The position numbers were made by a program, and so were the translations under genes. The notes below the pieces were generated by a model. That model was not told the DNA's origin, did no database searches, and was given only the letters and a program-made list of their open reading frames with translations. Positions 1-56,600 of a DNA stretch of 64,000 nucleotides are shown here, one piece after another; positions within the stretch are counted from its first letter, which is position 1, and every line of letters begins with the position of its first letter. The stretch is from positions 62,001 to 126,000 of the forward strand of contig JAUPSS010000013.1 in the NCBI GenBank assembly GCA_040285825.1, read 5' to 3'. This DNA comes from Eukaryota sp. TZLM1-RC (lineage: Eukaryota; Protista; Metamonada: BaSk clade).

Positions 1-3000
1 CCGAAGGTAATAGACGACTATATAGATTCTTAAATAATCTTGGAAAATAGTCCAAATTTCATTAGCATAGAATGGCTTCAAAATTAACGTCTTCTTATCC
101 CAATATCGGAGCAAATGTTTGACAAATTTGAAGAAGAAACGGTGAGCACAAACATCCTGTAATTAAAAATACAAAATAAAAATAACAAACCCATGATTTT
201 ACTCTCTGAGCAAATAGACTCTTTTCTCCAGTTACGTGTTGGCCGAAAAGATCTTCTCTTAGATGAATTAGGTCTTGTGGAACTTGGGTTAGTACTGGAT
301 TATCAATGAGAGTGATCAGCCGCTTGGTTGTACCATTGATTGGATGTTCTCTTAGAATAAACCCCATTAGGGCATCTTCTATGATAAGTGATTATTAAAT
401 CAAACCTCCGTCAAATTGTGTATTATGGTAGTTTAAGATATGCTTCAGTACAGACTTCTTATAAATCGCACAAGCCCCATGATTGTAATTAGCAGTTCCC
501 CAGCTTGATTGAAAGTGTTTGGTGTATCCAGCAAGAATGTATTCAAAATCTTGCATCCATGTCAGCAACTTACGTCTTGACCAAGAATAGTTGGGACCTA
601 AAGTCAGTCTCCATTGCTAAAACAAACGCTTTCCTTCTGGTATTGACCCACTGGCAATCGCCTTTACATAATCCTGCTGTTCGGCATCAACAAATGGTGT
701 TGTCTGATCTGCTCTAATGCCAATTACGCCACCAGCAATATCATCATCACTAAGCAAATGAGTTTGCCAATTCATTTTATGGGGAATAATGCAATCATCA
801 TCCATAATGACGACATACTCGATGTGTTCCATCTCCTCCAGAATGTAATCACAAACCCACCTTATTGCTGCAGTTTTGTTTCCAACAGGTGTGTAATAAT
901 ATTTCACAGTGGAGCCCCACTCATAAACCTTTTCCACGATCTTTACAGTTTCGTCATTCGGATTAGGGCGGAGTGATCCTGTGTTATGACAAACAAATAC
1001 ATTGCCATCAGCAACGGACAAACAGGCCATTTTTAAAGATCTTTCAAAAGTTTTCTGAGTTTCTTCCCTTTGAGTCTTAAAATCTTCGTAATTTGGCATT
1101 TTGTGCCATCTTCCTAGTGAATGAGCACTTTTGCTTCTGTTAAAACTATTTTCAATGTCTCGCGGGTCTCTGCCAGATGACATATATGAAGCAATCAGAA
1201 CAGCAACATTGTGGGGGTTCTCTACCACTGTACCCTTACTTGGCTCTCTATGTGGGGTATACGGGTGAGATAGCATTGCAAACACTAAAATTGCGTATTC
1301 TAATGAAAGTATGGCTATTGAAAGCCACCATGAATCAAATTGATGTAGTAAACGTCTTTCATATATAAAATCATTGAAAAAAACTGAAAAAATTAGCAAA
1401 ATTGAAACACCAAATACCAAAAGAACAATTTTTTCAGAAGTAGTTCTATGAGTGGTCTTGATTTTTCGTTCTTTTACATAATGCATCACCATCTTCACCC
1501 ACCTTGAATCATTTAATACAGTTGAGAGCTTTGGAGGTAAATGCTTAGATGATTGACCAGGACCTGGCAGTTGAAATTCTTCTTGTTTAGTACCAGTAAA
1601 GCAATTTGAAGGGGGAGAGGAAAATGAGGCGTAAATAGAAATACCCAATATAACGATAAAGCCAATAGCAATAACACCGTCAAAAAAACTAAACACTGAA
1701 GGAGTCAAGTCAAACGCAATGTAGCTAAGAGACAACTGGTCCAGACTGTACACAACATCCTGGATTAATGGAAGTTGTACTGATATAGTAAAGCCTGTGA
1801 ATGTTCTGTTGAGAATTTGTAAAGAAAAACCCAATTGAGAGCTGGTTGAGAATCCATTGACAAACAAAAAAATATTGGGTATTTTTAAAAATTCTTGTTC
1901 AAATGATACGAAAAAATAGAATAGATTGTCTGAATTAAGTGGGTCGTCAAAACTCCAAGTAACACCACCAGTGCCCAAAATAAAAGTGTCGGTTAATACC
2001 TTCGAATTAGGCAGCAATGAATAATCAAGCAATAAAGTATTAATTCTGGCTTGACTGACAAGGGATTCACTGGTGATGGTAATAAAGGAAGGGGAGGGTT
2101 CTGTGTTTGAATCGATTAAAATATTGGAATGATGATTCTTGAACCCAAAGCCAGTTAAACTATTAATTTCCTTGAAGAAACCATCCTCCAAATTTGTAGT
2201 TAAAGGCAAAGAGTGACTAAATTTTCCAGATTGTTCATTCAATGTCCAATTGGGATCAGTTGCATTAGACAGCAATGGCGAGGAGAAAAACTCAGTATTC
2301 ATCAAATGGTTACAATGTTCTTCAACAGCCATCCAATTCAGTGATAACTGGTCTACTTGACCATCAGTTACTAGACGTAGAATAAAAGACTTTGAATCAA
2401 GTTGAACCAGTTGTAAGTCAAATTTGCTTTTGGATGATATCTGGATACCTGCAATTCCATAAGAAATGGAAGGAGTTGTTTGAAATTCAAAATTAAATGG
2501 TACTTCTAATTGCACAGTGTTGATATCTCCTCCCCCTGTTAGTGACCAGAAAGTCACATCTCCGCTGTCCGTAATGACAGAAGGGGCACATGTATTTGAT
2601 TCCAACCATTCGAAAACATTTGGCAGGGGAAGAAAGAAAAATGCTGATAAAAATAGAAGAATTAAAACAATTCTGCAATCCCAGACTAATTTACCAATTC
2701 TTCCTTTTGGTTTTTCTTTTGAAATATTCGTACTTGCGACATCAATATCAAAAATAGTTTCTGGACATTTTAACCTTTCCTCCACTGCATCCACCTGAGG
2801 TAATTCTGTACCACGAAACAGAAACAATAACAGTAAAGCAGAAGACAAAAACAAAGGGAGAAGAAAGAAAGAAGCAGTTAGGCTGACTTTGAAAAGAAGC
2901 GGTGAAAGTGACACTAAATAAACTAAAACTGGAATTAAGTAAATTTTTAGTTTCCTAATTGAAAATAAAAAGAAGGCAAGGGTGACATTTAACAAAACAC

Positions 3001-4063
3001 AGGCCATAATGAATAAAGTCCAAATCAAGCTATTGGCTGACCAAATAACCTTAATAAAAGAGCAATTATTAACTTCAAAGTTCAAATCAAGATTACTAGA
3101 CACTAAGGAAAAGAATTTGAGTGGACCTTTTACATCACTGAAAGGAAAATTAATTTCATCAAGATTAACCAATACATTCTGATTCAACAAATACGTATCG
3201 TATTCAAAGTCAGCAGAGTTCAACCGAGTTGAGCAAACATCTTTATTGGTGTTAGGAACCCATGCCCAAGACATTAACCAATCATAAGGTTTAGATTCAT
3301 ACTCAATAGAAGTAAGACATTGGTTAGTGGTGGTAATAGTTTGGGAATCTTTGTCGTTCTTAACTGTGCCATTACAAGGGCAAATTAAAGACATTCTACC
3401 CAGTATCACATTAGGATTAGGGTTAGGGTTATTGAATTGTAGTTTTAAAGGTAAATAATTAGGGCTTAATTCAATTGATGTACTGGTTGTATTTAAGACA
3501 ACAGTTTCTAATGAACTTTGCATTGGTGATACTACAACTTCTCCCTCTACATTTCCAATCACTTCCAAGTCAAGAAAGGAAACACAACGAGGAACATCAG
3601 AAGAGAGGAAGAAATGATGCTCAAAGGGAACATCAGTTGGAAGGGAAAATGAAAACGAACTAAATCGATGATTCGATTGGATTTCTGGAACAATCAACTC
3701 AAAAAAGGACAAAAGAATAGGAGAGTCACTGGCGGTGGGCGTTAGGGTTAGATTAAACTCTCCATAAGTTGTGAGAGGAACACTGGTATCCACAGGCTCA
3801 TGTGAAGTAGGAGTTTCAAGTGTTATAGTGGATGATATAGGAGACTCCGATCTGAACCAGACAGTGGCATTGCTATAAGCAGTGAGTATGGTGAGTATGG
3901 TGGGCTCAGATAGCTTAGTTGGTGTTATTAAGATGTTGTAATCATGAGTTGAGGCTTCAATATGATGGTACTCAGATGAATCGACCGAGTAACAATTATG
4001 GGAATCACAAGGAAAGGCGATGGTAGAGACGACTAAATAGCAAATGAGAAGGACAGTCTTCAT
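1..4063 (-). CDS. Multi-pass membrane processive family-2 glycosyltransferase (polysaccharide synthase-like) with signal peptide and extracellular H-type-lectin-like repeats; exons 4063-628, 597-406, 378-191, 156-<1; runs off the window start
   Basis: The 1148-aa ORF continues in frame once three GT..AG introns are removed, giving GT-A motifs VLIASY, GNKTAAI, YVVIMDDD, QDFEY, HGACAIYK, DGEDALMG and FAQRVKSW. The last exon is open to position 1 (1324 codons in window). About 7 hydrophobic segments precede the catalytic domain. Confidence 0.88.
157..190 (-). other. 34-nt spliceosomal intron of GT2 gene
   Basis: GTTTGTTATT...AATTACAG directly after the QRVKSW Trp codon; splicing gives an open exon DVCAHRFFFKF... 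to the window edge. Confidence 0.82.
379..405 (-). other. 27-nt spliceosomal intron of GT2 gene
   Basis: GTTTGATTTAATAATCACTTATCATAG; contains in-frame TAA TAA; splicing creates the catalytic G-E-D motif. Confidence 0.88.
598..627 (-). other. 30-nt spliceosomal intron of GT2 gene
   Basis: GTTTGTTTTAGCAATGGAGACTGACTTTAG; contains the TAG that ends the track ORF and a CTGAC branch-like motif; splicing gives K-R-P-N-Y in frame. Confidence 0.85.
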
Positions 4064-5900: not shown

Positions 5901-6396
5901 ATGGATCTTAACACTTTCAAGAGACTGTTGGTGTCCTCCCTTTTCTGATCTTATCGAAGATATTCTAATGAGGACGACACTGAACAAGTAATGAAGAAGT
6001 TTATTGAAGAGTTCGATTTTGAAAACAACACTGTATGGTTCTGTGATTACATGTATAATGAGTCCCTATCGGGCCCTGCCTTCATGTCCGCAAACAGAGT
6101 AGGTGGTTTCTTGCAACGTTCTGAAAAGCTTGCTAGAGGACACTTCGCATCTATGTGTATCACTCGTGCTCCCGATGCAAGTCATAATGAAATTCACGGT
6201 TTCTGGGTTGTCCCAGGTGCCGAACCTTCGGACGTGCGTGCTGTCCCAGATTCTGAGTCTTATGATTGGCACAAGGCCGATTTGTCCGATGCCGCTCACG
6301 TTGATAAAATTATCAAGCTTGGAGCCTGGTTTGTTTCTCCAAATTACTTATTATAGGACTGTTGAAAACTTCCAAGATGGTAAAATCTTGAAATAA
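5901..6396 (+). CDS. Stand-alone eEF1B-gamma C-terminal domain protein (144 aa); introns 5927-5959 (33 nt) and 6329-6356 (28 nt)
   Basis: Spliced product MDLNTFKRLYSNEDD...WFCDYMYNE...FMSANRVGGFLQR...IHGFWV...PDSESYDW...GAWTVENFQDGKILK matches the EF1G domain motifs FKRxYSNED, FMSxNLIxGxFQR and GKIFK. Confidence 0.9.
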
Positions 6397-22014: not shown

Positions 22015-23697
22015 ATGTCAACCATCCTTGTCAAGCTTCCCTCTGGAAAGTCTGTGGAGTATCCTATTTACACCACTGGACTCACTATCCTCAAGGATCT
22101 CAATCCTGAAACATCTTCTATTGATGATGTAGCTGTTGTCCTCATCAATGGACAAATCTACTCTCTCAATGATCCTATTGACATTAACTGTACTTTCAAA
22201 CCTGTTGCTTTCAACACCTCTATTGGATGTGATGTTTACCGCCGTTCTCTTTGCTATGCAGTTGCTATGGTTGCTTCTGAACTGTGGCCTACAAGAAGGT
22301 TGATCATCTCCCACTCTATTGGCCATGGTTTGTCATTTCCATTTACATCTCACTATAGGCCTCTACTACTATTTCGATGGAGTTGAAACCACCAATGATG
22401 ACATTGTTGCACTCAACACTAGACTGCAAAAGCTCTCCAAGGATGCTCTTCCCATTTACCGCAAGACTCTTGCCTATGAAGAAGCAGTTGAACATTTCAA
22501 GCAAGCTGGTCTTTCCCAAACTGTTCTATTACTGGAACATAAGAACGAACCCCGAGTTTACGTATCAACTTGCGGTAACTACTTTGATTTATGGTACGCC
22601 CCTCTAGTCCAGAACACCTCGGCATTGAGTGTTTTTTCCATTGAAAAGTACCAGGAAGGATTGTTGATTAGGTATCCCGACAGCAAGGATCCTTCTTCTC
22701 TTCCTCCCTTTGTTGACAATCCCGTTCTTTATAAAGTTTATAAGGAACACAACCAATGGGGAGCTTGTCTTGACGTGAATTGTGTTGGTGATTTAAATCA
22801 TTTAATATTTAAGGGTAATATTAAAGACTTTATTATGGTTTCAGAAGCTCTTCACGATGGAAAAACTGCCGCAATTGCTGATAAAGTTCCTTCTAGTTGC
22901 AAATTAGTTTGTATTTGTGGCCCTTCTTCTTCAGGAAAAACCACCTTTTGTCGGAAACTTTCAATAGCTTTACGAGCAAGGGGATGGAAACCCATTTCTA
23001 TTTCCTTAGATGATTATTATGTAAATAGAGTTGATACTCCTTTGGATGAGGATGGTAACTGGGATTTCGAAGTAGTAGATGCTTTGGATTTGAAGCTTTT
23101 GAATAATGATTTAGTTGAATTATTCAAGGGAAAAACCATTAGATTACCAAAGTTCAATTTCAAAACTGGTATCAGAGAAGAGGGTGGTTTATTAACATTA
23201 CCAGAAAAAGGGGTGTTGATTATTGAGGGTATTCATGGTTTAAATCCAAGATTAACTGAAAAAGTTCCTGATGATGTCAAGTTTAAAATATTTATTTCTC
23301 CATTAACTCAATTGAATATTGATGATCACAACAGGATTTCCACTTCTGATAATAGGTTAATCAGAAGAATGGTAAGAGATAAGCAATTCAGGGTTATTCC
23401 GCTGAAGAAACCTTTGAAATGTTTCCGAGAGTTCGAAGGGGAGAAGACCTTTATATTTATAGATATCAAGGGGATGCTGATGCTGTTTTCAATTCAGCTT
23501 TGGATTATGAAATTTCTGTTTTAAAAGTATTGGCGGTTCCTCTTTTGCAGCAGATTAAGCCTTCTAGTATTTATTACTCAGAAGCTCGTAGATTGTTGGA
23601 CTTTTTGTCTCATTTTGATGCTATTATGAATGATGATGTTCCTTCAAATAGTCTGATTAGAGAGTTTATTGGTGGTGGCTGTTTCAATGTTCATTAG
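22015..23697 (+). CDS. udk: Bacterial-type ThrRS-N-terminal-like / uridine kinase (nucleoside kinase) copy A; intron 22328-22358; apparent 1-nt deletion at ~23391
   Basis: TGS-like start, YRRSL, ICGPSSSGKTTF P-loop, ISLDDYY, IIEGIHGLN, TSDNRLIRRMVRD, SLIREFIGG; GGG here versus GGGG in copy B shifts the frame. Confidence 0.85.
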
Positions 23698-24540: not shown

Positions 24541-26224
24541 CTAATGAACATTGAAACAGCCACCACCAATAAACTCTCTAATCAGACTATTTGAAGGAAC
24601 ATCATCATTCATAATAGCATCAAAATGAGACAAAAAGTCCAACAATCTACGAGCTTCTGAGTAATAAATACTAGAAGGCTTAATCTGCTGCAAAAGAGGA
24701 ACCGCCAATACTTTTAAAACAGAAATTTCATAATCCAAAGCTGAATTGAAAACAGCATCAGCATCCCCTTGATATCTATAAATATAAAGGTCTTCTCCCC
24801 TTCGAACTCTCGGAAACATTTCAAAGGTTTCTTCAGCGGAATAACCCCTGAATTGCTTATCTCTTACCATTCTTCTGATTAACCTATTATCAGAAGTGGA
24901 AATCCTGTTGTGATCATCAATATTCAATTGAGTTAATGGAGAAATAAATATTTTAAACTTGACATCATCAGGAACTTTTTCAGTTAATCTTGGATTTAAA
25001 CCATGAATACCCTCAATAATCAACACCCCTTTTTCTGGTAATGTTAATAAACCACCCTCTTCTCTGATACCAGTTTTGAAATTGAACTTTGGTAATCTAA
25101 TGGTTTTTCCCTTGAATAATTCAACTAAATCATTATTCAAAAGCTTCAAATCCAAAGCATCTACTACTTCGAAATCCCAGTTACCATCCTCATCCAAAGG
25201 AGTATCAACTCTATTTACATAATAATCATCTAAGGAAATAGAAATGGGTTTCCATCCCCTTGCTCGTAAAGCTATTGAAAGTTTCCGACAAAAGGTGGTT
25301 TTTCCTGAAGAAGAAGGGCCACAAATACAAACTAATTTGCAACTAGAAGGAACTTTATCAGCAATTGCGGCAGTTTTTCCATCGTGAAGAGCTTCTGAAA
25401 CCATAATAAAGTCTTTAATATTACCCTTACATATTAAATGATTTAAATCACCAACGCAATTCACGTCAAGACAAGCTCCCCATTGGTTGTGTTCCTTATA
25501 AACTTTATAAAGAACGGGATTGTCAACAAAAGGAGGAAGAGAAGAAGGATCCTTGCTGTCGGGATACCTAATCAACAATCCTTCCTGGTACTTTTCAATG
25601 GAAAAAACACTCAATGCTGAGGTGTTCTGGACTAGAGGGGCGTACCATAGATCAAAGTAGTTACCGCAAGTTGATACGTAAACTCGGGGTTCGTTCTTAT
25701 GTTCCAGTAATAGAACAGTTTGGGAAAGACCAGCTTGCTTGAAATGTTCAACTGCTTCTTCATAGGCAAGAGTCTTGCGGTAAATGGGAAGAGCATCCTT
25801 GGAGAGCTGTTGCAGTCTATTGTTGAGAGCAATAATGTCATCATTGGTGGTTTCAACTCCATCGAAATAGTAGTAGAGGCCTATAGTGAGATGTAAATGG
25901 AAATGACAAACCATGGCCAATAGAGTGGGAGATGATCAACCTTCTTGTAGGCCACAGTTCAGAAGCAACCATAGCAACTGCATAGCAAAGAGAACGGCGG
26001 TAAACATCACATCCAATAGAGGTGTTGAAAGCAACAGGTTTGAAAGTACAGTTAATGTCAATAGGATCATTGAGAGAGTAGATTTGTCCATTGATGAGGA
26101 CAACAGCTACATCATCAATAGAAGATGTTTCAGGATTGAGATCCTTGAGGATAGTGAGTCCAGTGGTGTAAATAGGATACTCCACAGACTTTCCAGAGGG
26201 AAGCTTGACAAGGATGGTTGACAT
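24541..26224 (-). CDS. udk: Bacterial-type ThrRS-N-terminal-like / uridine kinase copy B (550 aa), intron 25881-25911 (31 nt)
   Basis: Intact after splicing (HSIGHG-LYYYFDG); 1653 nt CDS; P-loop kinase motifs as in copy A. Confidence 0.92.
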
Positions 26225-36451: not shown

Positions 36452-39400
36452 ATGGCATCTCATGGAGAAAAGTTTCCTATGCCTCCAGAGCATCTACGCA
36501 AAATCTTTCAAGATCATGGAGATATGAGTGACAAGAAGTTTGCTGCAGATCGCCGTGCTTATCTCGGTGCACTTAAATATGTACCTTATGCGATCTTCAA
36601 ACTCCTCGAATCAATGCCTATGCCATGGGAATCTCAACGTCTCGTCAATGTGGTATATCACTCCACAAGCGCTCTTACTGTTGTCAATGAAACTCCCCGT
36701 GTCATTGAACCCATCTTCCTCGCTCAATGGGCGTTATCCTGGTTATCCATGAGACGAGAGAAGAGAGACCGTCAAAACTTTCGAAGAATGAAGTTTCCTC
36801 CTTTTGATGATGAAGAACCCCCACTTGATTTTGGAGAAAACATCCTCCCTCTCAATACACCAGATCCCATCGATCTTCCTTTAGATAGAGATGATGACCC
36901 TGTGGTTTATGATTGGATATTCCATCATTTACCTTTAATCGAGAAGCAGGGTATTGTCAATGGTCCTTCTTATCGCTCTTATAGACTTCCATTACCGATT
37001 CTTTCTTCCATCTATCGTCTTGCTCTCCCTCTCCTCAACCAACCAACCGACCCAAACTTCAACTATCTTTTTAATAAAGCATCCTTTCTTACTTCCAAAG
37101 CTCTTGGCCTGGCGATTCCTGGGGGTCCAAAGTTTGAGCCTCTCTACCCAATGCTGAGTAGTGATGACGTGGCAGATGAGTTTTCTGACGTCAACAAAGT
37201 AGTCCATCGACAGGGTATTAGGACAGAGCACAGGATTGCGTTACCTCATTTTTATAATGCTAGGCCTAGAGGAGTCGTGACTGGCCCCTATAAATATCCT
37301 ATCAATTTAAAACAACCAATAGATTTAAATGATTTAGAACCAGAAAGTTTGGGGTTTTATTGGAGGAGTGATTTGCATCCTATTCCAGCAGTAGAAGAGA
37401 CCAATCAATCACATGATGATGACGTAGTGATGACGTCATCAATCACACCATTGTTGACCGGTTTCCCCCTTAATCCACCATATTCTTCGGCATGCATTTC
37501 CTTGTTCTTTGCACCCAGTCCTTTCAATAAGAGAAATGGCTACACTAGAAGGTCCATGGATGTTGCTATAATGAAGTCTTGGTATAAGAACAGGACTGGC
37601 TATTTACCTGATGCTAAGCTGAGAGTTGCTCATCAGAAGTTGCTAAAGGATGAAGTAAAGAGGGAAGTTAAAGGAGAAAAGAAGGGATCAAGAAAAGCTC
37701 AAAGAAAGGTGGCTGCCAAATTTTTACAAACTAAATATTTCGAAACCACTACCATTGATTGGTTAGAAGCTGGTTTACAATTGGTAAAGCAAGGTCACAA
37801 TATGTTAACCTTGCTTATTCATCGGAAGAACCTGACATACCTCCATTTGGATTATAATTTCACTTTAAAACCAGTTAAAACACTAACCACCAAGGAGCGT
37901 AAGAAGAGTAGGTTTGGGAATGCTTTCCATTTAGTTCGAGAGCTACTCAAGTTCACCAAGCTAGTAGTGGATGCTCACGCTTTGTTTAGAATAGGTAATA
38001 TTGATGCTTATCAGTTGGCTGATGGTTTGCAGTACTTGTTTACTCATTTGGGCCATTTAACTGGAATGTATCGGTATAAATACAAACTAATGCACCAAGT
38101 TCGCATGTGTAATGACCTCAAATCACTTTATGATCACAGATTTGACCAACCTCCTTTAGTTGCAGGACCTGGTAATGGTTTCTGGCTTCCTACGTGGCGG
38201 ACCTGGATGTTTTTCATGAGGGGTTTGCTTCCGTTAATAGAAGGATGGTTGGGAAATCTTCTAGCTAGACAGTTTGAAGGGAGAGCTCAAATGTCACACA
38301 GCAGAAGTGTTACGAAACAACGTGTTGAGTCTAATTTTGATTTAGAACTTCGAGCTTTGGTCTTACAGGATGTAATGGACGTTATGCCAGCTGGTACTGC
38401 TTACCAAGGGGTTGCCAAGAGAATTATTGCACATTTAGGTGAAGCTTGGAGGTGTTGGAAGGCTAATTTACCTTGGAAAGTACCTGGAATGCCTGGTCCA
38501 ATTGAGGAAATGATATTAAGATATGTTAAAATGAAAGCAGATTGGTGGACTCAATCAGCTCATATTATGAGGGAAAGGGTCAAAAAAGGAGTTGCAGTTG
38601 ATAGAATAATGGCTCGCAAGAACCTTGGAAGAGTAGCAAGACTGTGGCTAAAAGAAGAACAAACGAGGCAGAATATCTATCAAAAAGAAGGTCCATATCT
38701 GTCGATTGACCAAGGGGTGTCCATGTATCGTTCACTAGTGAAATGGTTGGAAAATAGGGAATTTGCTCCAATACCATTCCCTCCTTTGAGTTATAAACAT
38801 GATAACAAGCTACTCATTCTTGCTTTAGAGGGTTTGAAAGAAGCGTATGTGGTTAAGACAAGATTGAATAGAGCTCAAAGAGAAGAACTTGGCCTTATAG
38901 AACAGGCTTATGAAGATCCTCAAACAGCACTGACCAGAATCAAGAAACATCTACTGACTCAACGTACCTTTAGAGAAGTGAAACTTGAGTTTTTTGACTT
39001 ATACACAGAAGTTTATCCCGTTTACGAAATTGAACCATTAGAAAAGATTACAGATGCATATTTAGATCAGTATTTGTGGTATGAAGCTGAAAAGAGGGGT
39101 CTGTTTCCTAATTGGGTTAAACCCTCCGACAATGAGCCCGCACCTCTGCTAGTGCACAAGTGGGCGACTAGCATCAACTCATTAACTAACATTTGGGAGA
39201 CAGAAAGTGGAGAAACCGTAGTCCATGCAGAAATACCATTACAACGAATCGCAGAGAACATTGATCTCACTTTGTTGAATACCCTTCTCAAAGTTATTAT
39301 GAATCCCTCCTTGGCTGATTACATCACTGCTAAAATGAACGTAGTGCTTTCATTTAAAGATATGAGCCATACGAACACTGTCGGCATGGTCAAGGGTCTT

Positions 39401-42400
39401 CAATTTGCTTCATTTGTTTTTCAATTCTACTCAATGGTTATAGACCTCGCTCTTATTGGGCCTAATAGAGCTTCTGAACTACTTGGTCCTGTGGATTCAC
39501 CTAATGAGTTTGCCACGTGGCATGACGTGGAAGTTGAAACCAAACACCCTCTAAGGCTTTATTGTAGAGATGTAGATACTGTGTATATGTTGTTTAAATT
39601 CTCTCAATCTCAATCACGTGATCTGATTAATCGATATTTGACCTCTCATGACGTGGCAGAGTTTGCAGACACGTTTCCAATCAAATCTTCTTGGCCTCCC
39701 GCTGAAAGAATGCGTCTCACCAAGCATGATACCACAGTGGCTAGAGCTTTGTTTTGGAATTTAAAACAACGAATTCCCTCAGCTTTGTGTAATTTATCAT
39801 GGAATGACTCTTTTATGTCGGTGTATTCCTCAAGTAACCCCGCTCTTTTAATTGAACTTTCACAATTTGATTTAAGAATTGTTCCCGTGTCGAGGATTGG
39901 AAAAGATGCTGTCGCTAATAGAACCGAGTCTACATGGGCTCTTCAAGACCAAATCACAAAGGATCGCACGGCACTGGCTTTTGTTCGGGTGTCCAAAAAA
40001 GGAATGGAGAGGTTTAATAATAGAGTTCGTCAGATTTTGATCACTTCTGCCTCCACTACTTTTTCGAAAGTTATCAACAAATGGAACACGACCCTCCTTG
40101 GCATGGTGTCCTACTTTAGAGAAGCTATTGTCCATTCACCTGAACTCCTTGATTTAATCGTCCGCTGTGAAAATAAGATTCACACCAGAGTCAAAGTTGG
40201 ACTTAATTCCAAAATGCCTTCTCGTTTCCCTCCTGTCGTTTTCTATGCACCCAAAGAACTTGGCGGTCTAGGTATGCTCTCGATGGGCCATATCCTCATT
40301 CCCCAGCAAGATATGAGGTATTCCCAACAAACAGTGAGTGGAATAACCCATTTTAGGGCGGGGTTATCTACTGATCAGGAACAGTTAATTCCTAATTTGT
40401 TTAAGTACATAACCCCATGGGAGGCTGAAATCACTGATTCTCAAAGGGTTTGGGCTGGTTATGCCTTGAAAAGACAAGAAGCAGCGGCTGAAGGTAGACC
40501 ATTAACCCTTGAAGATATGGAAGATGCCTGGGAACGAGGTGTCCCGAGAATATCAACTCTTTTCCAGAAGGATCGTCATACTTTAGCCTATGACAAGGGA
40601 TGGAGGGTGCGGGCGGCATTCCGAAAATACCAGTTACTCCGAATTAATGCTTTTGGCTGGACAAACGCTAGACATGATGGTAGACTCTGGAACCTTACCA
40701 ACTATAGAACAGACTTGATTCAAGCTTTGGGCGGTATAGAAACTATTCTAGAGCATTCGTTATTCAAGGCGACAGGGTTTACTTCATATGAGAATTTGTT
40801 CTGGGAGCGTACTTCAGGATTTGAAGAAGCAATGAAGTTCAAAAGGTTGACGAATGCTCAACGAACTGGTTTAAACCAAATTCCCAATAGAAGGTTCACT
40901 TTATGGTGGTCACCTACGATCAACCGAGCTGATGTTTACGTTGGCTTTCAGGTTCAGTTAGATTTGACTGGAATTTTTATGCATGGTAAGATCCCAACAT
41001 TGAAAATTTCGTTAGTCCAAATTTTCAGAGCCCATCTGTGGCAAAAAATTCACGAATCGGTTGTTTTTGATCTTTGTAACATTATCGACCGCGAAATGGA
41101 CAGGTTGGACATTGAAACTGTTCAAAAAGAAACTATTCATCCAAGAAAGTCATATAAAATGAATTCCTCAACTGCAGATATTACTCTCTCATCAAGCTTT
41201 AAATGGCCAGTTTCCCCACCTTCCCTTCTTTCTGCGGATGATTCGTTTGATCTCGCACATAGTTCTAAGTTGTGGATTGACGTTCAACTACGATGGGGTA
41301 ATTACGACCAGCATGATATTGAAAGATATTCAAGGGCAAAATTTTTGGAGTATACCACTGACAGCACATCCATTTACCCTTCCCCGACAGGTATTTTAAT
41401 TGCTATTGATCTCGCTTATAATCGCTACTCTGCCTATGGTAATTGGATTCCGGGACTCAAACCACTTTTACAGCAAGGAATGGATCGGGTAATGAAAAGT
41501 GATCCTGCATTGTACGTGTTGCGAGAACGTATTCGCAAGGCTTTACAACTCTACTACGCCGAACCTACACAAACTTATTTAAATTCTACTAATTATGGTG
41601 AGTTATTCGCAAAGGGAACTACTTGGTTTGTGGATGATTCTGCCGTATACAGAGTGACAATGAGGAAATCTACAGAAGGTAGTGTGATTACCAAACCAGT
41701 AAATGGTGCTGCTTTCTTCTTTAACCCTAGAATTGGCCAACTTTACCTTAAGGTTATGCACACTTCCATATGGGCTGGTCAAAAAAGACTTGGTGGGGTT
41801 GCCAAGTGGAAAACCGCTGAGGAATGTGCTGGGCTTGTTCAATCATTGCCAGAAGTAGAGCGACCTGAAACCATTATTGTCACCAGAAAAGGAATGATGG
41901 ATCCTTTAGAAGTTCACTTGATAGATTTCCCCAATATCTCTTTGAAGGGATGTGAGCTTTTACTACCATTTACTGGGCTCTTGAAGCATCCAAGACTAGG
42001 AAATAGAGTGTTATCGGCAACAGAGCCTCAAATGGTACTCTACAATCTATATGATGATTGGTTGGACTCCATTCCCGCTTACACTGCTTTCTCTAGGTTA
42101 ATTCTAATTCTCCGTGCTCTAACCATTGACCAAGACAAGGCATTTTCGATCCTCAACAGTACCGCCCCCACCACCAAACCTGAACATCTATGGCCAAGTT
42201 TAAGTGGCGAGGAGTGGATTACGGCAGAGCAAAAGCTTAAAGATTTGGTTATTGTTGATTTTGGTGTCAAAAATAGCGTAAATGTGGAGAACTTGACTCA
42301 GTCTGAAATGCGAGACATTATATTAGGGATGGAAATTTCAATGCCCAACACTGTTGAAGAAAAGATCAAAAAGATTGATGAAGAAAGAAGACTACCTTCC

Positions 42401-43345
42401 GAATTGTCAACAGTCACTACGAAAACTCTCACTAGGCATGGTGATGAAGTCGTGGTGACTACCACATCCAAATACGAGCAAGAGACGTTTAAATCAAGAG
42501 CTGACTGGAGACAGAGAGCACTTGCTTGCACCACTTTGGTTTCTCGATGTGCAAATCTTATAGTAAATTCCAATCCGACCACTGAATCTCCATTGTATGT
42601 TTTCCCTCAGAATTTAATTAAAAAGTTTGTTTCTATTTGTGATATAAGGGCTCAAGTGGGTGGCTTTGTTTATGGAATTCAACTCGAGGAAGGAGTTTTT
42701 GAAGTTCGGTCTATTGTCGTTCCGTACCAGTTTTCGGATCACCAATCAATTACTCTTCCTCTGGGTGATCCTTCCCATCCTGCAGTTGAACAATTGGTTC
42801 CTCTTGGTTGGGTTCATTCAGTAACTTATGCTTCATCTGCTTCGTTGTTGTCTCCAGTAGCAGCAGTGAATCACTCAAAAATGATTGTCAATCATTCATC
42901 TTGGGGGTCACATTCAGCTATTTTTGAACTGGTATTGTCAGCCGGAAGCGTGACTCTCTCTTGCCATCATTTAACGTCATCAGGTTTTGACTGGACGAGA
43001 CCTTTGATTGAAAGAGATTCTACTTTTATATTATCAGCGGCAAATTCGGAACAAAATCCATGGAATAATAACTTTTCCATTCTTGGCCAAGTTAGTGTGT
43101 CTTCATCATTTAAAGGATTCTTCTTGGTTCCAGCTGATACTGATGGGTTGTGGAATCTTAATTTTCTTGTTGGGAGGAGAAACTTATTGTCGTCATTGTC
43201 AGAATTTCCAGTCGTTTGTGGAACTCCATTGACATTTTTCGATCCCCTACACAGACCAACTCACTTCATTGGACCTGCAAAATTTGGTGGTAAATTTTCT
43301 AAAAAGAGCACAGTCGGACAAGATTCTGAAAATTTGTTTGAATAG
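36452..43345 (+). CDS. PRP8: Pre-mRNA-processing-splicing factor 8 (2297 aa), intronless
   Basis: MPPEHLRK, PPFDDEEPP, TTKERKKSRFGNAFHL, KMPSRFPPVVFY, QIPNRRFTLWWSPTINR, HPRKSYKMNSS; C-terminal Jab1/MPN domain. Confidence 0.99.
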   Translation: MASHGEKFPMPPEHLRKIFQDHGDMSDKKFAADRRAYLGALKYVPYAIFKLLESMPMPWESQRLVNVVYHSTSALTVVNETPRVIEPIFLAQWALSWLSMRREKRDRQNFRRMKFPPFDDEEPPLDFGENILPLNTPDPIDLPLDRDDDPVVYDWIFHHLPLIEKQGIVNGPSYRSYRLPLPILSSIYRLALPLLNQPTDPNFNYLFNKASFLTSKALGLAIPGGPKFEPLYPMLSSDDVADEFSDVNKVVHRQGIRTEHRIALPHFYNARPRGVVTGPYKYPINLKQPIDLNDLEPESLGFYWRSDLHPIPAVEETNQSHDDDVVMTSSITPLLTGFPLNPPYSSACISLFFAPSPFNKRNGYTRRSMDVAIMKSWYKNRTGYLPDAKLRVAHQKLLKDEVKREVKGEKKGSRKAQRKVAAKFLQTKYFETTTIDWLEAGLQLVKQGHNMLTLLIHRKNLTYLHLDYNFTLKPVKTLTTKERKKSRFGNAFHLVRELLKFTKLVVDAHALFRIGNIDAYQLADGLQYLFTHLGHLTGMYRYKYKLMHQVRMCNDLKSLYDHRFDQPPLVAGPGNGFWLPTWRTWMFFMRGLLPLIEGWLGNLLARQFEGRAQMSHSRSVTKQRVESNFDLELRALVLQDVMDVMPAGTAYQGVAKRIIAHLGEAWRCWKANLPWKVPGMPGPIEEMILRYVKMKADWWTQSAHIMRERVKKGVAVDRIMARKNLGRVARLWLKEEQTRQNIYQKEGPYLSIDQGVSMYRSLVKWLENREFAPIPFPPLSYKHDNKLLILALEGLKEAYVVKTRLNRAQREELGLIEQAYEDPQTALTRIKKHLLTQRTFREVKLEFFDLYTEVYPVYEIEPLEKITDAYLDQYLWYEAEKRGLFPNWVKPSDNEPAPLLVHKWATSINSLTNIWETESGETVVHAEIPLQRIAENIDLTLLNTLLKVIMNPSLADYITAKMNVVLSFKDMSHTNTVGMVKGLQFASFVFQFYSMVIDLALIGPNRASELLGPVDSPNEFATWHDVEVETKHPLRLYCRDVDTVYMLFKFSQSQSRDLINRYLTSHDVAEFADTFPIKSSWPPAERMRLTKHDTTVARALFWNLKQRIPSALCNLSWNDSFMSVYSSSNPALLIELSQFDLRIVPVSRIGKDAVANRTESTWALQDQITKDRTALAFVRVSKKGMERFNNRVRQILITSASTTFSKVINKWNTTLLGMVSYFREAIVHSPELLDLIVRCENKIHTRVKVGLNSKMPSRFPPVVFYAPKELGGLGMLSMGHILIPQQDMRYSQQTVSGITHFRAGLSTDQEQLIPNLFKYITPWEAEITDSQRVWAGYALKRQEAAAEGRPLTLEDMEDAWERGVPRISTLFQKDRHTLAYDKGWRVRAAFRKYQLLRINAFGWTNARHDGRLWNLTNYRTDLIQALGGIETILEHSLFKATGFTSYENLFWERTSGFEEAMKFKRLTNAQRTGLNQIPNRRFTLWWSPTINRADVYVGFQVQLDLTGIFMHGKIPTLKISLVQIFRAHLWQKIHESVVFDLCNIIDREMDRLDIETVQKETIHPRKSYKMNSSTADITLSSSFKWPVSPPSLLSADDSFDLAHSSKLWIDVQLRWGNYDQHDIERYSRAKFLEYTTDSTSIYPSPTGILIAIDLAYNRYSAYGNWIPGLKPLLQQGMDRVMKSDPALYVLRERIRKALQLYYAEPTQTYLNSTNYGELFAKGTTWFVDDSAVYRVTMRKSTEGSVITKPVNGAAFFFNPRIGQLYLKVMHTSIWAGQKRLGGVAKWKTAEECAGLVQSLPEVERPETIIVTRKGMMDPLEVHLIDFPNISLKGCELLLPFTGLLKHPRLGNRVLSATEPQMVLYNLYDDWLDSIPAYTAFSRLILILRALTIDQDKAFSILNSTAPTTKPEHLWPSLSGEEWITAEQKLKDLVIVDFGVKNSVNVENLTQSEMRDIILGMEISMPNTVEEKIKKIDEERRLPSELSTVTTKTLTRHGDEVVVTTTSKYEQETFKSRADWRQRALACTTLVSRCANLIVNSNPTTESPLYVFPQNLIKKFVSICDIRAQVGGFVYGIQLEEGVFEVRSIVVPYQFSDHQSITLPLGDPSHPAVEQLVPLGWVHSVTYASSASLLSPVAAVNHSKMIVNHSSWGSHSAIFELVLSAGSVTLSCHHLTSSGFDWTRPLIERDSTFILSAANSEQNPWNNNFSILGQVSVSSSFKGFFLVPADTDGLWNLNFLVGRRNLLSSLSEFPVVCGTPLTFFDPLHRPTHFIGPAKFGGKFSKKSTVGQDSENLFE

Positions 43346-47451: not shown

Positions 47452-49957
47452 ATGTCCATCATTGGTATTGACCTTGGTACTACCAACAGCTGTGCTTACA
47501 CTTGTGAGCGGAATGGAACGTTTGTCAGTTCTGTTGTTGACTTCAATGGAACTGCCTCGATGCTGCTGATGAAAAGTATCCAACTCATAATTTACGTCAG
47601 AACTCATCGTTTAAGTCAAGATTACGTCACAGAGCGGAACAGGCACGGAAGAGCCTCTACACCGCAGAACACGCTCGTATTTCTCTCAAGGTTGCTAGAG
47701 CAGTTACATTTAGCCGAATGATTCATAGAAGTACATTTGAAAGTCTCTGTCAGCCCATGTTTGATCAATGTATGACGTTAGTTGCAGAACTTTTGAAGCG
47801 CAGAGGCCTGACTTCCAATGATGTAGCACAAGTTCTGCTAGTTGGACTTTTTACCAGAATTTCAAAAATACGTCAAATGTTGACAGATTCTTTTGGTATA
47901 GAGAAGGTAAAAGGAGACCTGAAACTAGACGAAGTTGTTGCTCGTGGAGCTTCTCTTGCTGTCAATAATGCTGAAGCAAATGAGAAAGTGGTGTTGTATC
48001 ACATAACAGCACGTCCCCTTAGAACTGATTTTCTTCGCCAATCTAAACTAATGGGGCTTTCATGCGATGACAACAGCTTAATCTCAGCGCTTTGTTCCAC
48101 AATATCCAATGTTCTTCTCAATCTTGCGGAATGGAACTGTGACAAGTTCGTCGATCAGGTGTGTCACCCGATTATGACTGCCGCTGAGCTCATCGCTAAA
48201 CATTCTGTAATTCTCAAGCCGTTAGGTAGTGTAATAACAGATGTACTCTCTGTCCTCAAACAAGTCAAGTACAACCGTTTTCAATCGGTGGTCTTAGCTG
48301 CCCGACTTCTTCGTCTTACCAAGGCTACCTTTTCTCCCTTAGAGAAGCTTCCCGATCTTTCCAACTCCCCCGCCATTCGCGACACCATTGATAACTTTGT
48401 AACTCTTACTAATAAAATCACCACATACTTAAACCAGTACAACGACTCAAAATGGTACAGAAAGGTCTTTTCCCGAGAGAGGTTCAAGAGAGATTTTGAA
48501 CAACACAACAAGCTTTTAGATGATTTTTCCTCTGAGTTGAATCTAGAGTTTTCTGGTATTGCACTTGAGAAGCTTTCTACTGTGTCATTCTCTAAGATAG
48601 AAGGCATCATTACTCGTGATGAAGAAGTTTTCAAGTTTGCATTAGCTACCTATAACCAGTCAATTCTAGATCAAATCAGTGAACAATATTCAGATTTAGT
48701 GCAGGAAATGCAGGCTACGATACAGACTACACTTAGAGAGGAAATTAAAACACAATCAATGTCTTGTTTGAAGGAAAAGGAAGAAAAGCAAGCAGAAATC
48801 ATCCAATTGCAGAGTTGTGCAGACAACGTTGAAATTGATATAGACAACGATGATCTTGTTGTGGATTGGAAGTCCAAAATTCACAGTGGCCAAGCAGAAG
48901 TCGTATTTGCAGAATACGGGTTAGCCAATGTTGCAATGAAATTTTTCAAGGATGATGAATACATTTCTGCCGATCTTGCAAGAGAGTACCGCATTTTAAA
49001 CTCTCTTCCCAATGTTCCTTCTGTTCCAAGAGTATATGGAATCGCTCGAGTCTATGAGAAAGGGGATGTTCGAATTGGGCTGGTTATGGAAAAACTTTCG
49101 ACTTTTACACAGAGATAAAGTAGGAAAAATTGAATCTGAGAAACAAAAAATTGATATTTTGATTTCATTAGCGAAAACATTGGCGACATGCCACGAATGC
49201 CATTTTCTTCAAAGGGACCTTAAGCCAGATAACATCTTGTTTAGAGACAGAGTTCCTGTAATGGGGCAGTGGGAAAAACACTGGTTCATCTAACATGTCT
49301 CTTTCTCTGGTGCAAAATAGAGTTATTACTCCCAGTTGGACCAGTCCAGAGCAAGCTTCAGGTGAAAGAATTCACAGTGACAGAATCGATGTTTTCTCAT
49401 TTGGACTAATTATGCTATTTGTCTTTACCGGTGAAAGTATCTGGCAAGGAATAGTAGATGGAAACCGTAAAAATCAAATTATTATCGATAACCTGATTTC
49501 TGGTAACATTCCATCTATTCCTCTGCATGAGGACTTACCTCTCAGTTTGTATCCTTTACTTTCCCAGTGTTTGGAGTTTGATTTTACCCAAAGACCAAGT
49601 ATGTCAGAGGTTTGGTCTGTTTTGACTGCTTACAAGAAGAAATTACGTGTTGTGGATTGTTTAACTTATGACAATATGCCACTTTGCCATTATGCACTTG
49701 CATTGATTGATAGTGATTACTTAAGTGATGTAGGTGTGGAAGTTCGTATGGAAATGTACCAGAAATTGTTGGACCTTTTTTCACAATGTTATTCCCAAAA
49801 ACTCGGAACTAGGTACCTTGCAATAATGAAATTTATTGAACAATCTGACCATTTAACCAATGACTTAATTCAAAAGAGAAAAGAAAGCGAATGTCTACTG
49901 AAACAAAGAATTGATGCTTTTGACAAAGTTCCTGTATGTGATGTATCTGTGGTATAG
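47452..49957 (+). pseudogene. Decayed Hsp70-NBD / MLKL-like four-helix bundle / protein kinase gene
   Basis: IGIDLGTTNS start, internal deletion, then RLRHRAEQARKSL...VLLVGLFTRI...DEVVARGA in frame with VKYNRFQSVVLAARL...KWYRKVF...FEQHNKLLDD, then kinase VAMK, QRDLKPDN, WTSPE and DVFSFG with frameshifts near 49100 and 49261. Confidence 0.8.
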
Positions 49958-53625: not shown

Positions 53626-56600
53626 CTATTTTGCAAAAGCTCCAGACACCTTATCATGGATAGCCCTCAAATCCCTGAAACAACCAGCTAAAAGAGATTG
53701 TAGACCAGGAACATTACAAATTTCACCAATGACCTTCTCCAATTCCTTTGCTAAATTAACTCTTTCAACTCCATTTAAATGAAGAATCATCTCTTTAACA
53801 GGAGCTGCTTGGTTTGCATCTACAATCTTGCCTGATTTATCAATAATCTTTGCACACCTTTCTATCAATGAGGAGGGCACAGTATCAGGTGCAGCCTCAG
53901 CCAATTGTCTTCTCCTTGCAGTTCTAGGATCATCCTTTTTCTTGGAACCTTCTTTCTTTTGACTAATTGGCTTAATATGAGAGGTAAAGTATAACGGGTT
54001 GTACTGGGTAAGTGAGTAAAAAGGTTTTCCGTTTATGCGTAGTCTGTCAAGACAAATTTCAGTAATATCAGCTGAGACTCCAAATGACGGTTCGTGTAAT
54101 GTATTTGAAACAAAAACTGGAGAGCAAAACAAAAAAGATGGAGTTTCTTCAATTGCAGACTTCAACCCAGCCAAGGATACTTCCCCAATTGAACAATTGA
54201 TGGGAGGCATGATAAAAGAACAAAGTTTTTCACTAGATATCTGAGAGGCTAGTAAATCAATGACTTCTTGATCGATTGGGAAATGACTACAAAGGTTTAA
54301 AACCTCAAAAGTACACCTGAGGGATAACAACTGCTTAATCAATCGCAATCGCTGATCCCTGGTGGTTTCCTTTGTGACATGAAGGTAAAATTTGGGAGTT
54401 CTCAATTGATTCAAACATGTGAGAGAGCTACGATCATTCACTAAGAACCTGTGTACAGGGAGATTAGAAATTGTTAAAGATTCAAGGTTTAATCGAGAAA
54501 AACTACCCATTAAAGAGCTGAAATCACCAAGCGAAATCTTCTGGTGAGCAAAGTTTAGTCTTAAATTGACTGGTACATCAGCTAATTTTAATGGTAAATT
54601 TGATTCTAAAAATAGCATAAAAGAATTTGAAAAGCCAGTGGCACCAAAGCTGAGAGTGATTGGAGCGGGTTTCTTTGGTTTATAACTGGCAATTACGTGG
54701 GGTAACAAAAGCAAAACATCTCTTTCGGAAAAACCACAGTTGGCAATTGAAAGGGATGTTAGCTGACATCTAGAAATGGATTGGACAAACGCGGCAACTC
54801 TTTTGGATTTGAACATAACACCATTCAAGGACAAGTGTTTCAAGTTCTTAATAGTGGGTAGTAATGGAATGATCAGAGCAACATGGAAATCAGTAAAACT
54901 TAAATTCAACCCCTCTAAATAAATAAGAGTGTTTAATACCCCCGCCAGATCCTGAGATTGGCGTTGGTTAAGTTGATTGTAGGAGATGTCAAGGTATTTG
55001 AGTGTGGATTTCAAATAAGAACTACTCAGTAATTGTAGAAAAGCCGAAAAACAACTTGCCAAATTCAAATCACGCAAAGTCAACACTTCTAAATGCTTAG
55101 AGGAGCAAAGATCTAACAGCAGTTCATTAAGTCCATTTGAAGGTAAACCAACTGAATTTAGCTCAAAATGCTTAATTTTTTCGAAATTTCTAGGTGCAGG
55201 TACTGTTGGTGGAATCCAACTAATTTCATTCAATTCAAAAACAATATTGCTCAGTTTGATTACCCTTGGTGGCTGGGCTGAATGGAAAAGATTGGTTAAA
55301 GACTGTAGCAGCAAAGATCTTTTCCTTTTGGTATTAGGCAAGTTCTTATTCTGGTAATTCAATTCAATATCATGTGGAGAAAGATTCTCAAAACTCATTG
55401 CAAAATCGACATCCAAGACATCAATATTGAATAAATAAGGGATGCCAGCAATTAAATCAGTAATGACCGGATCCAAAGTGGGCACCAAGGAATTACTAAA
55501 ACACAAAGGGTGTAACTGCCTGCTTCCTAATCCATGGAGGTCAGAACAATCTTTTAACAGAGTTTGGAGAACGGAAACCAGTCGATAATCACGCCAAGAA
55601 GCTCCACAATCATCGACAAGTAGAAGATTTGCTATATTCGATAACTGAAAGTTTGAATTAACGTTAGCCGGAACAACTTTGGGCTTAATCGGTCCCCTTA
55701 TAGTGCATTTTCTAGCTGGTTGGGGAACCATCGTGTAGTAAGCTGTGATTAAACTCGAAACAAAAACTTCATGGTCGGTTTCGTCAATCAAAAACCTGAT
55801 CCAATAACCATCCTTCATTGCTATCAACAACCCATGACCAACTGGACCCTCACTGGCTTCTGAATGTAGAGTCTCACAACATGGGTCGACTGGAGTATCA
55901 GAAGCAATGAGAGAAAGTTGGGAAAGATGAATAGACTGTCTAATCCATCTCCCATCACCTTGCACTTTAATAGCGTAAATCCTAAATGGTGTAAGCAAGA
56001 GCAAACGATCGCCTTCAGGCTTTTTTCGTACTTTGGTAGCTTTACAATAAGCTTTAATTGTGTCCAGAGTTTCGGGACATTCTTGTCTTATGAAATCTTT
56101 ATCCAAGTCAGACAGGTCAAAGGACATTTCAACGGCTGTATCGCTGATATCAACAGCTGGGGTAGATGACGTTACCACTTCGTCAGAGTGGCCGTGAATC
56201 AAGGCGAGTGACGTGGCATTAGGTGGCATGATTTTATTATAGTAATATACAAACCTGCAGGTAAATACAAAATGATCCTTTTCGTCAAAGAGGAACCGAT
56301 TCCAATATCCATCTCTAGTCACAACCAACAACCCAAACCCTAGTGGTCCATCAGAAGCTTCACGATGAACACTCTCGGGAAGTGGTCGGTGAGGTGTGTC
56401 AATGGAGACAATGGAGAGAGAAGAGAAGGGAATTGACTGGCGAAGTGTTCGGGAGTTACCATTGATCTTGCAAATAAAGAGAGAAGAAGAAGTAAGGAAC
56501 AAAAGTCGATCTCCTTGAGATTTCTTCTTGACTTTGTCAACAATGGCTGAGCAGATTACATGGTCTACTGGTTCCTCAATGGCGGATGATAGAAAGTTCC

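What the first reader, a model, noticed from the sequence alone, without database searches (positions are those of the whole stretch)
1..4063. Polysaccharide synthase (GT2) fused to extracellular H-type-lectin-like repeats
Seen: after splicing, the protein has complete processive GT2 motifs (DDD, GED, QRVKSW). Between TM4 and TM5 (about nt 2515-1708) are two clear and one degenerate repeat of the pattern VxFxxxFxxxPxI...F.....L.W/YxA. Counting helices from the signal peptide puts these repeats outside and the GT domain in the cytoplasm. Established: this pattern is typical of H-type lectins (discoidin C-terminus, Helix pomatia agglutinin), which bind GalNAc/Gal as trimers, and the Giardia cyst wall contains a beta-1,3-GalNAc polymer. 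Inference: this may be a wall or cyst glycan synthase carrying its own product-binding pseudo-trimeric lectin. I do not recognise this architecture from described proteins.
Basis: partly seen in the sequence, partly recalled or inferred. Interest (0 to 1): 0.8.

Follow-up and report, generated by a model that had tools for sequence, protein, structure and literature searches.

The report
Lectin-bearing polysaccharide synthase in Skoliomonas
A soda-lake flagellate related to Giardia has one gene joining a membrane sugar-polymer-making enzyme to three outward-facing lectin-fold modules, a combination I found only in its small clade and in no paper, but in this copy the lectin's known sugar-binding residues are gone.

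Summary
Real. One four-exon gene of Skoliomonas litria (TZLM1-RC) encodes 1440 aa: signal peptide, unknown 325-aa ectodomain, four TMs, three H-type lectin modules, three TMs, a GT2 synthase domain, further TMs. Lectins and DxD motif lie in one exon. The lectin region models as a single-chain pseudo-trimer (pLDDT 74; module rmsd about 2 A to discoidin I and HPA) and lies outside. Among 1.84 billion proteins the fusion appeared only in Skoliomonas and Barthelona, as a paralogue family with swapped heads (kinesin, Hsp70, none, or this one). The scan found the family before on other DNA of this genome. Two corrections: all three modules here lack the pocket Asp/Arg/Trp that sister paralogues keep, so GalNAc binding is unsupported for this copy; and the motifs are variant (first Asp is His, QRVKSW is not QxxRW). 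The enzyme belongs to an uncharacterised protist GT2 subfamily (Perkinsus, a bicosoecid, metagenomes), not to chitin synthases. Best reading: a synthase of a wall or surface polysaccharide, product unknown. No Giardia homologue was found, but those searches were weak; no RNA evidence. The joined spliced protein was not used as a search query.

The parts
628..4063 (-). Exon 1 (1145 aa): signal peptide to the first half of the GT2 domain; holds both the lectin modules and the DxD motif
4016..4063 (-). Signal-peptide-like N-terminus (aa 1-16)
   Evidence: hydropathy; inference
3038..4015 (-). Unknown extracellular head domain (aa 17-342); no Pfam, Atlas or phmmer assignment; same layout in the RCL and GEM-RC relatives
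2807..3031 (-). TM1-TM3 (aa 345-419)
2612..2674 (-). TM4, family-wide helix before the lectin block; its N-side is cytosolic (kinesin/Hsp70 heads sit there in paralogues)
2315..2584 (-). H-type lectin module 1 (aa 494-583), bracketed by invariant Cys492/Cys584; pocket Asp to Gln, Arg to Lys, Trp lost
2015..2275 (-). H-type lectin module 2 (aa 597-683), degenerate, lower model confidence; pocket residues lost
1703..1993 (-). H-type lectin module 3 (aa 691-787); pocket residues lost
1628..1696 (-). TM5
1265..1429 (-). TM6 and TM7, the two helices that precede the GT domain in the wider subfamily too
628..1216 (-). GT-A domain, first half: IASY (aa 957), VCHN (His1026 at the first-Asp position), GNKT, DDD (aa 1088-1090)
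598..627 (-). Intron 1, 30 nt, phase 1, in-frame stop
406..597 (-). Exon 2: QDFEY and HGA motifs, Gly of GED
379..405 (-). Intron 2, 27 nt, phase 1, splits GED; same position in the GEM-RC relative
191..378 (-). Exon 3: catalytic Asp of GED to QRVKSW
157..190 (-). Intron 3, 34 nt, phase 0; same position in the kinesin paralogue P0002
1..156 (-). Start of exon 4 (interface helices and C-terminal TMs); continues 351 nt past the window edge to the stop (L010 16960-17466)

Best explanation
A membrane-embedded GT2 polysaccharide synthase of an uncharacterised protist subfamily, to which the Barthelona-Skoliomonas ancestor added a TM-(H-lectin)3-TM block. Shown: one gene, domain order, lectin fold and pseudo-trimer model, outward topology, family range. 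Inferred: the cytosolic GT-A domain takes a nucleotide sugar, extends a beta-linked chain with the GED aspartate as base, and passes it through its TM helices to the outer or lumenal side, as chitin and hyaluronan synthases do; the product is a cyst-wall or surface polysaccharide. The lectin block ancestrally bound Gal/GalNAc-type sugar (pocket kept in headless paralogues); in this paralogue it has lost those residues and most likely serves as a structural spacer or docking module, or binds another ligand. The swappable heads (kinesin, Hsp70, none, or this signal peptide + ectodomain + 3 TM) probably place each paralogue at a different site, for instance different layers or the plug of the double-walled cyst. 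The donor sugar is unknown.
For: Single exon for lectins and DxD; H_lectin and GT2 Pfam hits; 11 lectin-GT2 relatives, all from Skoliomonas or Barthelona; BaSk GT halves form one branch, SH-aLRT 100, quick tree; motifs GNK, DDD, QDxEY, HGA, GED, QRxxSW kept in 106-116 of 117 subfamily proteins of 400 aa or more; nearest solved structure is oomycete chitin synthase, weak (E 0.057) but with the QxxEY, GA, ED, TxxP and QR motifs in register; GT exons about 40-69% identical to paralogues against 16-28% for the lectins; model matches discoidin I, HPA, SLL-2 per module and fungal single-chain triple H-lectins over 265 residues at TM 0.76-0.80; a sister isolate forms double-walled plugged cysts (PMC11603281).
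Against: No member of the subfamily has a measured activity that I could find. The first Asp is His, and its mutation abolishes activity in PsChs1 (PMC9556331). No RNA run was found. Cysts are reported for TZLM3-RCL only, not for S. litria. The GT and TM part was not modelled, so a channel is assumed.
Confidence: 0.6

Rival explanations
1. One reading: this protein makes a Giardia-type GalNAc wall polymer and holds its product with its own pseudo-trimeric lectin.
For: H-lectin fold and pseudo-trimer; host is a metamonad close to fornicates (PMC11603281); the Giardia cyst wall synthase was still without a gene in PMC2924369 and is called 'tentatively' named in PMC13315228; paralogues P0003/P0007 keep the discoidin pocket.
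Against: Pocket Asp/Arg/Trp lost in all three modules of this copy; no named diplomonad homologue (insensitive); H-type pockets also bind methylated rhamnose (10.64898/2026.06.18.733164), so the fold does not name the sugar; the enzyme's lectin-less relatives are in Perkinsus and a bicosoecid.
Confidence: 0.15
2. The GT domain is a slow or dead enzyme acting as a regulatory or scaffolding subunit (for instance in hetero-oligomers with paralogues) or as a sugar-nucleotide-sensing receptor module.
For: First Asp replaced by His in all ten BaSk homologues and here, against Asp in 103 of 113 motif-bearing subfamily proteins; Arg of QxxRW absent; eroded lectin pocket; long branch of this copy (1.45).
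Against: DDD, GED and the Glu/Arg pair of QDFEY/QR are kept; the His is fixed in the whole clade, including Barthelona, which would leave the clade with no active member; QRxxSW is the subfamily's own invariant form.
Confidence: 0.12
3. A non-processive glycosyltransferase that makes a short oligosaccharide or glycolipid (NodC-like or lipid-acceptor type), with the ectodomains serving adhesion or prey recognition in the feeding cell.
For: Only weak family hits (Glycos_transf_2 below cut-off; sub-threshold PgaC and NodC hits for a relative); bacterivorous host; two unrelated ectodomains facing out.
Against: The channel-entrance motifs and the TMs before and after the GT domain follow the layout of polymer-translocating synthases.
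Confidence: 0.13

Closest known systems
Chitin synthases (PsChs1 of Phytophthora sojae, PDB 7WJM; PMC9556331) and hyaluronan synthases, CAZy GT2
   Same: Membrane GT-A enzyme with DxD, ED catalytic motif, QxxEY and QR motifs, TMs flanking the domain.
   Different: EDR is EDA, VLPGA is NHGA, QRKRW is QRVKSW, first Asp is His; sequence match only E 0.057; no lectin block in those enzymes.
Unnamed protist GT2 subfamily (Glyco_tranf_2_3-like; Perkinsus marinus/olseni/chesapeaki, Bicosoecida sp. CB-2014, eukaryotic metagenome contigs, one giant-virus contig)
   Same: GNK, DDD, QDxEY, HGA, GED, QRxxSW[DE], two TMs before the GT domain and a shared C-terminal TM region.
   Different: None of 134 outside proteins has an H-lectin; they keep the first Asp; the BaSk proteins have two insertions and form their own branch.
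H-type lectins (Helix pomatia agglutinin, discoidin I/II C-terminal domain, SLL-2; PF09458) and fungal single-chain triple H-lectin proteins
   Same: Fold per module (rmsd 2.0-2.6 A over 85-90 residues) and three-module packing.
   Different: Tethered between two TMs of an enzyme; pocket residues lost in this copy.
Giardia cyst wall synthase (activity described by Karr and Jarroll 2004, as cited in PMC2924369 and PMC13315228)
   Same: Related host clade, membrane glycan synthase of a possible cyst wall.
   Different: No sequence to compare; no Giardia homologue found here; donor sugar untested.
Fungal myosin-motor chitin synthases and MIT-domain oomycete chitin synthases (myosin fusion from own knowledge; MIT in PMC9556331)
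   Same: An accessory head that positions a GT2 synthase; the kinesin paralogues are the closest analogy.
   Different: This copy's head is extracellular and of unknown fold; those enzymes carry no lectin.

Membership tests
H-type lectin domain (PF09458) | Profile match above the curated cut-off | tested here: met
   48.1 bits against cut-off 24, two stretches; third module by family HMM, E 0.017
H-type lectin domain (PF09458) | Six-stranded beta-sandwich fold, three modules packed as a trimer | tested here: met
   Model pLDDT 74, pTM 0.71; matches to 2w94, 2ccv, 3wmp and to fungal triple H-lectins at TM 0.76-0.80; predicted, not solved
Gal/GalNAc-binding H-type lectin | Pocket residues (discoidin I Trp235 and Tyr241; Asp and Arg equivalent to HPA Asp55/Arg63, numbering from own knowledge) | tested here: not met
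   Module 1 Gln/Lys/no Trp, module 2 Gly/gap/Thr, module 3 Ser/Gly/Pro; kept in module 1 of P0003 and P0007
Gal/GalNAc-binding H-type lectin | Measured sugar binding | not testable with these tools
   needs a glycan array
Processive GT2 synthase | D,D,D,Q(Q/R)xRW signature | tested here: inconclusive
   Second and third Asp present (DDD, GED); first Asp is His by motif context; QRVKSW has Q-R and Trp but one extra residue and no Arg before Trp
Processive GT2 synthase | Cytosolic GT-A domain flanked by TM helices that could form a channel | tested here: inconclusive
Processive GT2 synthase | Polymer synthesis from a nucleotide sugar | not testable with these tools
   needs an assay
Chitin synthase | EDR, QRRRW/QRKRW and (V/L)LPGA motifs; Chitin_synth profile | tested here: not met
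   EDA, QRVKSW, NHGA; no Chitin_synth hit on any exon
Protist QRxxSW GT2 subfamily (unnamed) | GNK, DDD, QDxEY, HGA, GED, QRxxSW[DE] motifs in order | tested here: met
   Each exon matches the subfamily profile and members
Giardia cyst wall synthase | UDP-GalNAc-specific, encystation-induced beta-1,3-GalNAc synthesis | not testable with these tools
   gene unknown in the papers read; no RNA run

The most novel reading that the evidence does not exclude
The BaSk lectin-GT2 family is a set of cyst-wall synthases that make a Gal/GalNAc polymer, each paralogue aimed at a different wall layer or the plug by its head (kinesin, Hsp70, none, or this ectodomain), and the uncharacterised QRxxSW GT2 subfamily supplies the first sequence lead to the unidentified Giardia-type GalNAc wall synthase.
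Probability: 0.12. Interest if true: 0.9.

Novelty: new variant of a known kind. Interest (0 to 1): 0.6.

Why it matters
Polymer-translocating GT2 enzymes with a built-in extracellular lectin trimer were not found in the papers searched, and the enzyme belongs to a wide protist subfamily with no known product (including the oyster parasite Perkinsus). The host is cultured, is close to the Giardia lineage and has relatives with a cyst type unique among metamonads, so the product, timing and location can be tested. The family offers a natural series (intact against eroded lectin pocket; four kinds of head) for asking what the lectin does for synthesis. If any member makes a GalNAc polymer, it would bear on the Giardia cyst wall synthase, known as an activity since 2004.

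Tried and rejected
Single-sequence fold of the lectin block failed (pLDDT 35); redone with a 12-row alignment. phmmer of the lectin block or module 1 alone found no PDB lectin; only the family profile did. Word searches with exon 1 and with the BaSk GT alignment found only self or one relative, and the wider alignment missed two of its own rows, so these blanks say little. The head domain stayed unassigned: Pfam, Atlas (best 0.82, low recognition) and pairwise tests against the RCL and GEM-RC heads (z 1.7 and 0.1) gave nothing firm. No bacterial or archaeal relative by pattern in GTDB genomes or by tblastn in plasmids. Sequencing runs: DNA only, five identical 151-nt pieces, no RNA. Giardia Myb2-type boxes upstream: three in 1.8 kb, the window average, rejected. 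Chimeric or mis-spliced fusion rejected: one exon, and eleven relatives share the order. No synteny with the RCL or GEM-RC loci. The careful tree did not finish; the quick one is quoted. Searches were input slips and were corrected.

Full report
Source. A neighbouring gene of the window lies on contig JAUPSS010000013.1 of assembly GCA_040285825.1, the assembly that also encodes P0002, named Eukaryota sp. TZLM1-RC, which is the type isolate of Skoliomonas litria, a free-living anaerobic metamonad of soda lakes (PMC11603281). Earlier notes of this scan gave that name first; I checked it as above.

Gene. The minus-strand ORF 4063-617 has 1148 codons. Three short GTTTG...AG introns (627-598, 405-379, 190-157) give four stop-free exons in continuous phase. 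Each exon sits in the database's own 1440-aa product where expected, and exon 4 runs on to a stop 351 nt outside the window. Intron 3 has the same position and phase in the paralogue P0002, and intron 2 in the GEM-RC relative. The lectin modules and the DDD motif are in exon 1, so the fusion does not rest on splicing. No RNA run was found; the DNA runs gave five identical short pieces only. As the operators asked, the spliced model was searched exon by exon, by reference; the joined protein was read and used to check junctions and hydropathy but was not used as a search, fold or tree query. The GT domain as a whole was searched with database proteins of relatives.

Topology. Hydropathy gives a signal peptide and seven TMs in exon 1, and at least two more in exon 4. 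The loops before TM4 and after TM5 have seven Lys/Arg each near the membrane, the lectin block none. Cys492 and Cys584 are invariant in the ten full-length rows of the lectin alignment, as expected of a disulfide. In P0002 and P0004 a kinesin motor, which must be cytosolic (established knowledge), is followed by exactly one TM before the lectins.

Lectin block. Pfam H_lectin matches twice (E 1.3e-12); an HMM from two paralogues finds three modules; the family profile retrieves HPA, HAA, discoidin I and II and SLL-2 from the PDB. AlphaFold2 on a 12-row alignment gives an all-beta model (pLDDT 74, pTM 0.71). Single modules match discoidin I and HPA at rmsd 2.0-2.1 A over 85-90 residues, the whole matches three-fold beta assemblies at middling Z of 7-8 and fungal single-chain triple H-lectin proteins at TM 0.76-0.80 over 265 residues. 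Fold and pseudo-trimer are thus well supported by prediction. The pocket is not: discoidin binding needs Trp235 and Tyr241 (10.64898/2026.06.18.733164), and the conserved Asp and Arg (HPA Asp55, Arg63; own knowledge) complete it. Module 1 of P0003 (GEM-RC) aligns to discoidin I with Asp, Arg and Trp in place, as does P0007; Barthelona P0011 keeps part. In the window protein the three positions read Gln/Lys/none, Gly/gap/Thr and Ser/Gly/Pro (module 2 aligns least surely). The Tyr site is kept in no family member. GalNAc binding by this copy is therefore unsupported, though another ligand is possible.

Enzyme. Pfam GT2 hits are weak. Relatives outside the clade form a large lectin-less subfamily of protists: Perkinsus species, a bicosoecid, many gene-dense eukaryotic metagenome contigs and one giant-virus contig, with GNK, DDD, QDxEY, HGA, GED and QRxxSW in 106-116 of 117 proteins. 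The nearest solved structure is Phytophthora chitin synthase at E 0.057, with channel-entrance motifs in register, but the chitin synthase signatures EDR, VLPGA and QRKRW (PMC9556331) are not met. The first Asp of the processive signature is His in the window protein and all ten BaSk homologues (position assigned by motif context, not by structure). The GT exons are about 40-69% identical to paralogues, the lectins 16-28%, which argues that the enzyme half is under the stronger constraint.

Range. The exhaustive search with exon 1 was used because the claim rests on absence: 20 hits in 1.84 billion proteins. Eleven carry lectin plus GT2 parts and all come from S. litria, Skoliomonas sp. TZLM3-RCL and GEM-RC, or Barthelona sp. 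PCE; their GT halves form one branch (SH-aLRT 100 in a quick tree); none of 134 outside proteins has the lectin block. Heads differ: kinesin (P0002, P0004), Hsp70 (P0012), none (P0003, P0007, P0011), or signal peptide + ectodomain + TMs (this gene, P0009 of RCL, and the GEM-RC locus L009, whose database model P0010 skips that part at T-runs). The heads of this last type share layout and a short juxtamembrane pattern but are not significantly alike by pairwise score, and have no assignable fold. No diplomonad homologue appeared, but the GT searches missed even some of their own rows, so absence from Giardia is not shown.

Literature. No paper with an H-type lectin-glycosyltransferase fusion was among those listed, and the two Skoliomonas papers do not mention lectins. 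TZLM3-RCL forms double-walled cysts with a plug, unique among metamonads; cysts are not reported for S. litria. The Giardia GalNAc polymer synthase had no gene in PMC2924369 and none is given in the passages read of PMC13315228.

Verdict. A real and apparently undescribed domain architecture confined to one small metamonad clade: a new variant of membrane GT2 synthases. Most likely it makes and exports a wall or surface polysaccharide of unknown composition (0.6). The scan had already noted the family on other DNA of this genome; this copy adds a fourth, extracellular type of head and the eroded pocket.

Noticed in passing
window 5901-6396 (+): EF1-gamma C-terminal domain (PF00647) encoded alone in a 144-aa gene, head to head with the synthase gene.
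   Followed up: partly
window 22319-23524 (+) and 24541-25920 (-): Two uridine-kinase-family ORFs with the same domain offsets facing each other, apparently an inverted duplication.
   Followed up: no
window 36452-43345 (+): PRP8 as one 2297-aa ORF.
   Followed up: no
window 47718-49118 (+): ORF with an Hsp70 fragment followed by an MLKL-N-like helical domain (E 8e-7).
   Followed up: no
window 53626-57129 (-): 1167-aa ORF with no Pfam match.
   Followed up: no
L004 2542-4485: A giant-virus metagenome bin (GVMAG) encodes a lectin-less member of the same GT2 subfamily.
   Followed up: partly
L009 10001-13930: The GEM-RC gene is longer than its database model P0010: two frame changes at T-runs (assembly errors or introns) hide the head, TMs and lectin module 1, and the model stops inside the GED intron. 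Several other relatives' models also end at intron positions.
   Followed up: yes
P0043, P0048, P0052, P0088-P0090, P0120 and others: Perkinsus species carry several paralogues of this uncharacterised GT2 subfamily; a candidate for their wall polymer.
   Followed up: no
whole window: CWACAG occurs 86 times against 55 expected; spread evenly, probably codon or splice-acceptor bias.
   Followed up: no
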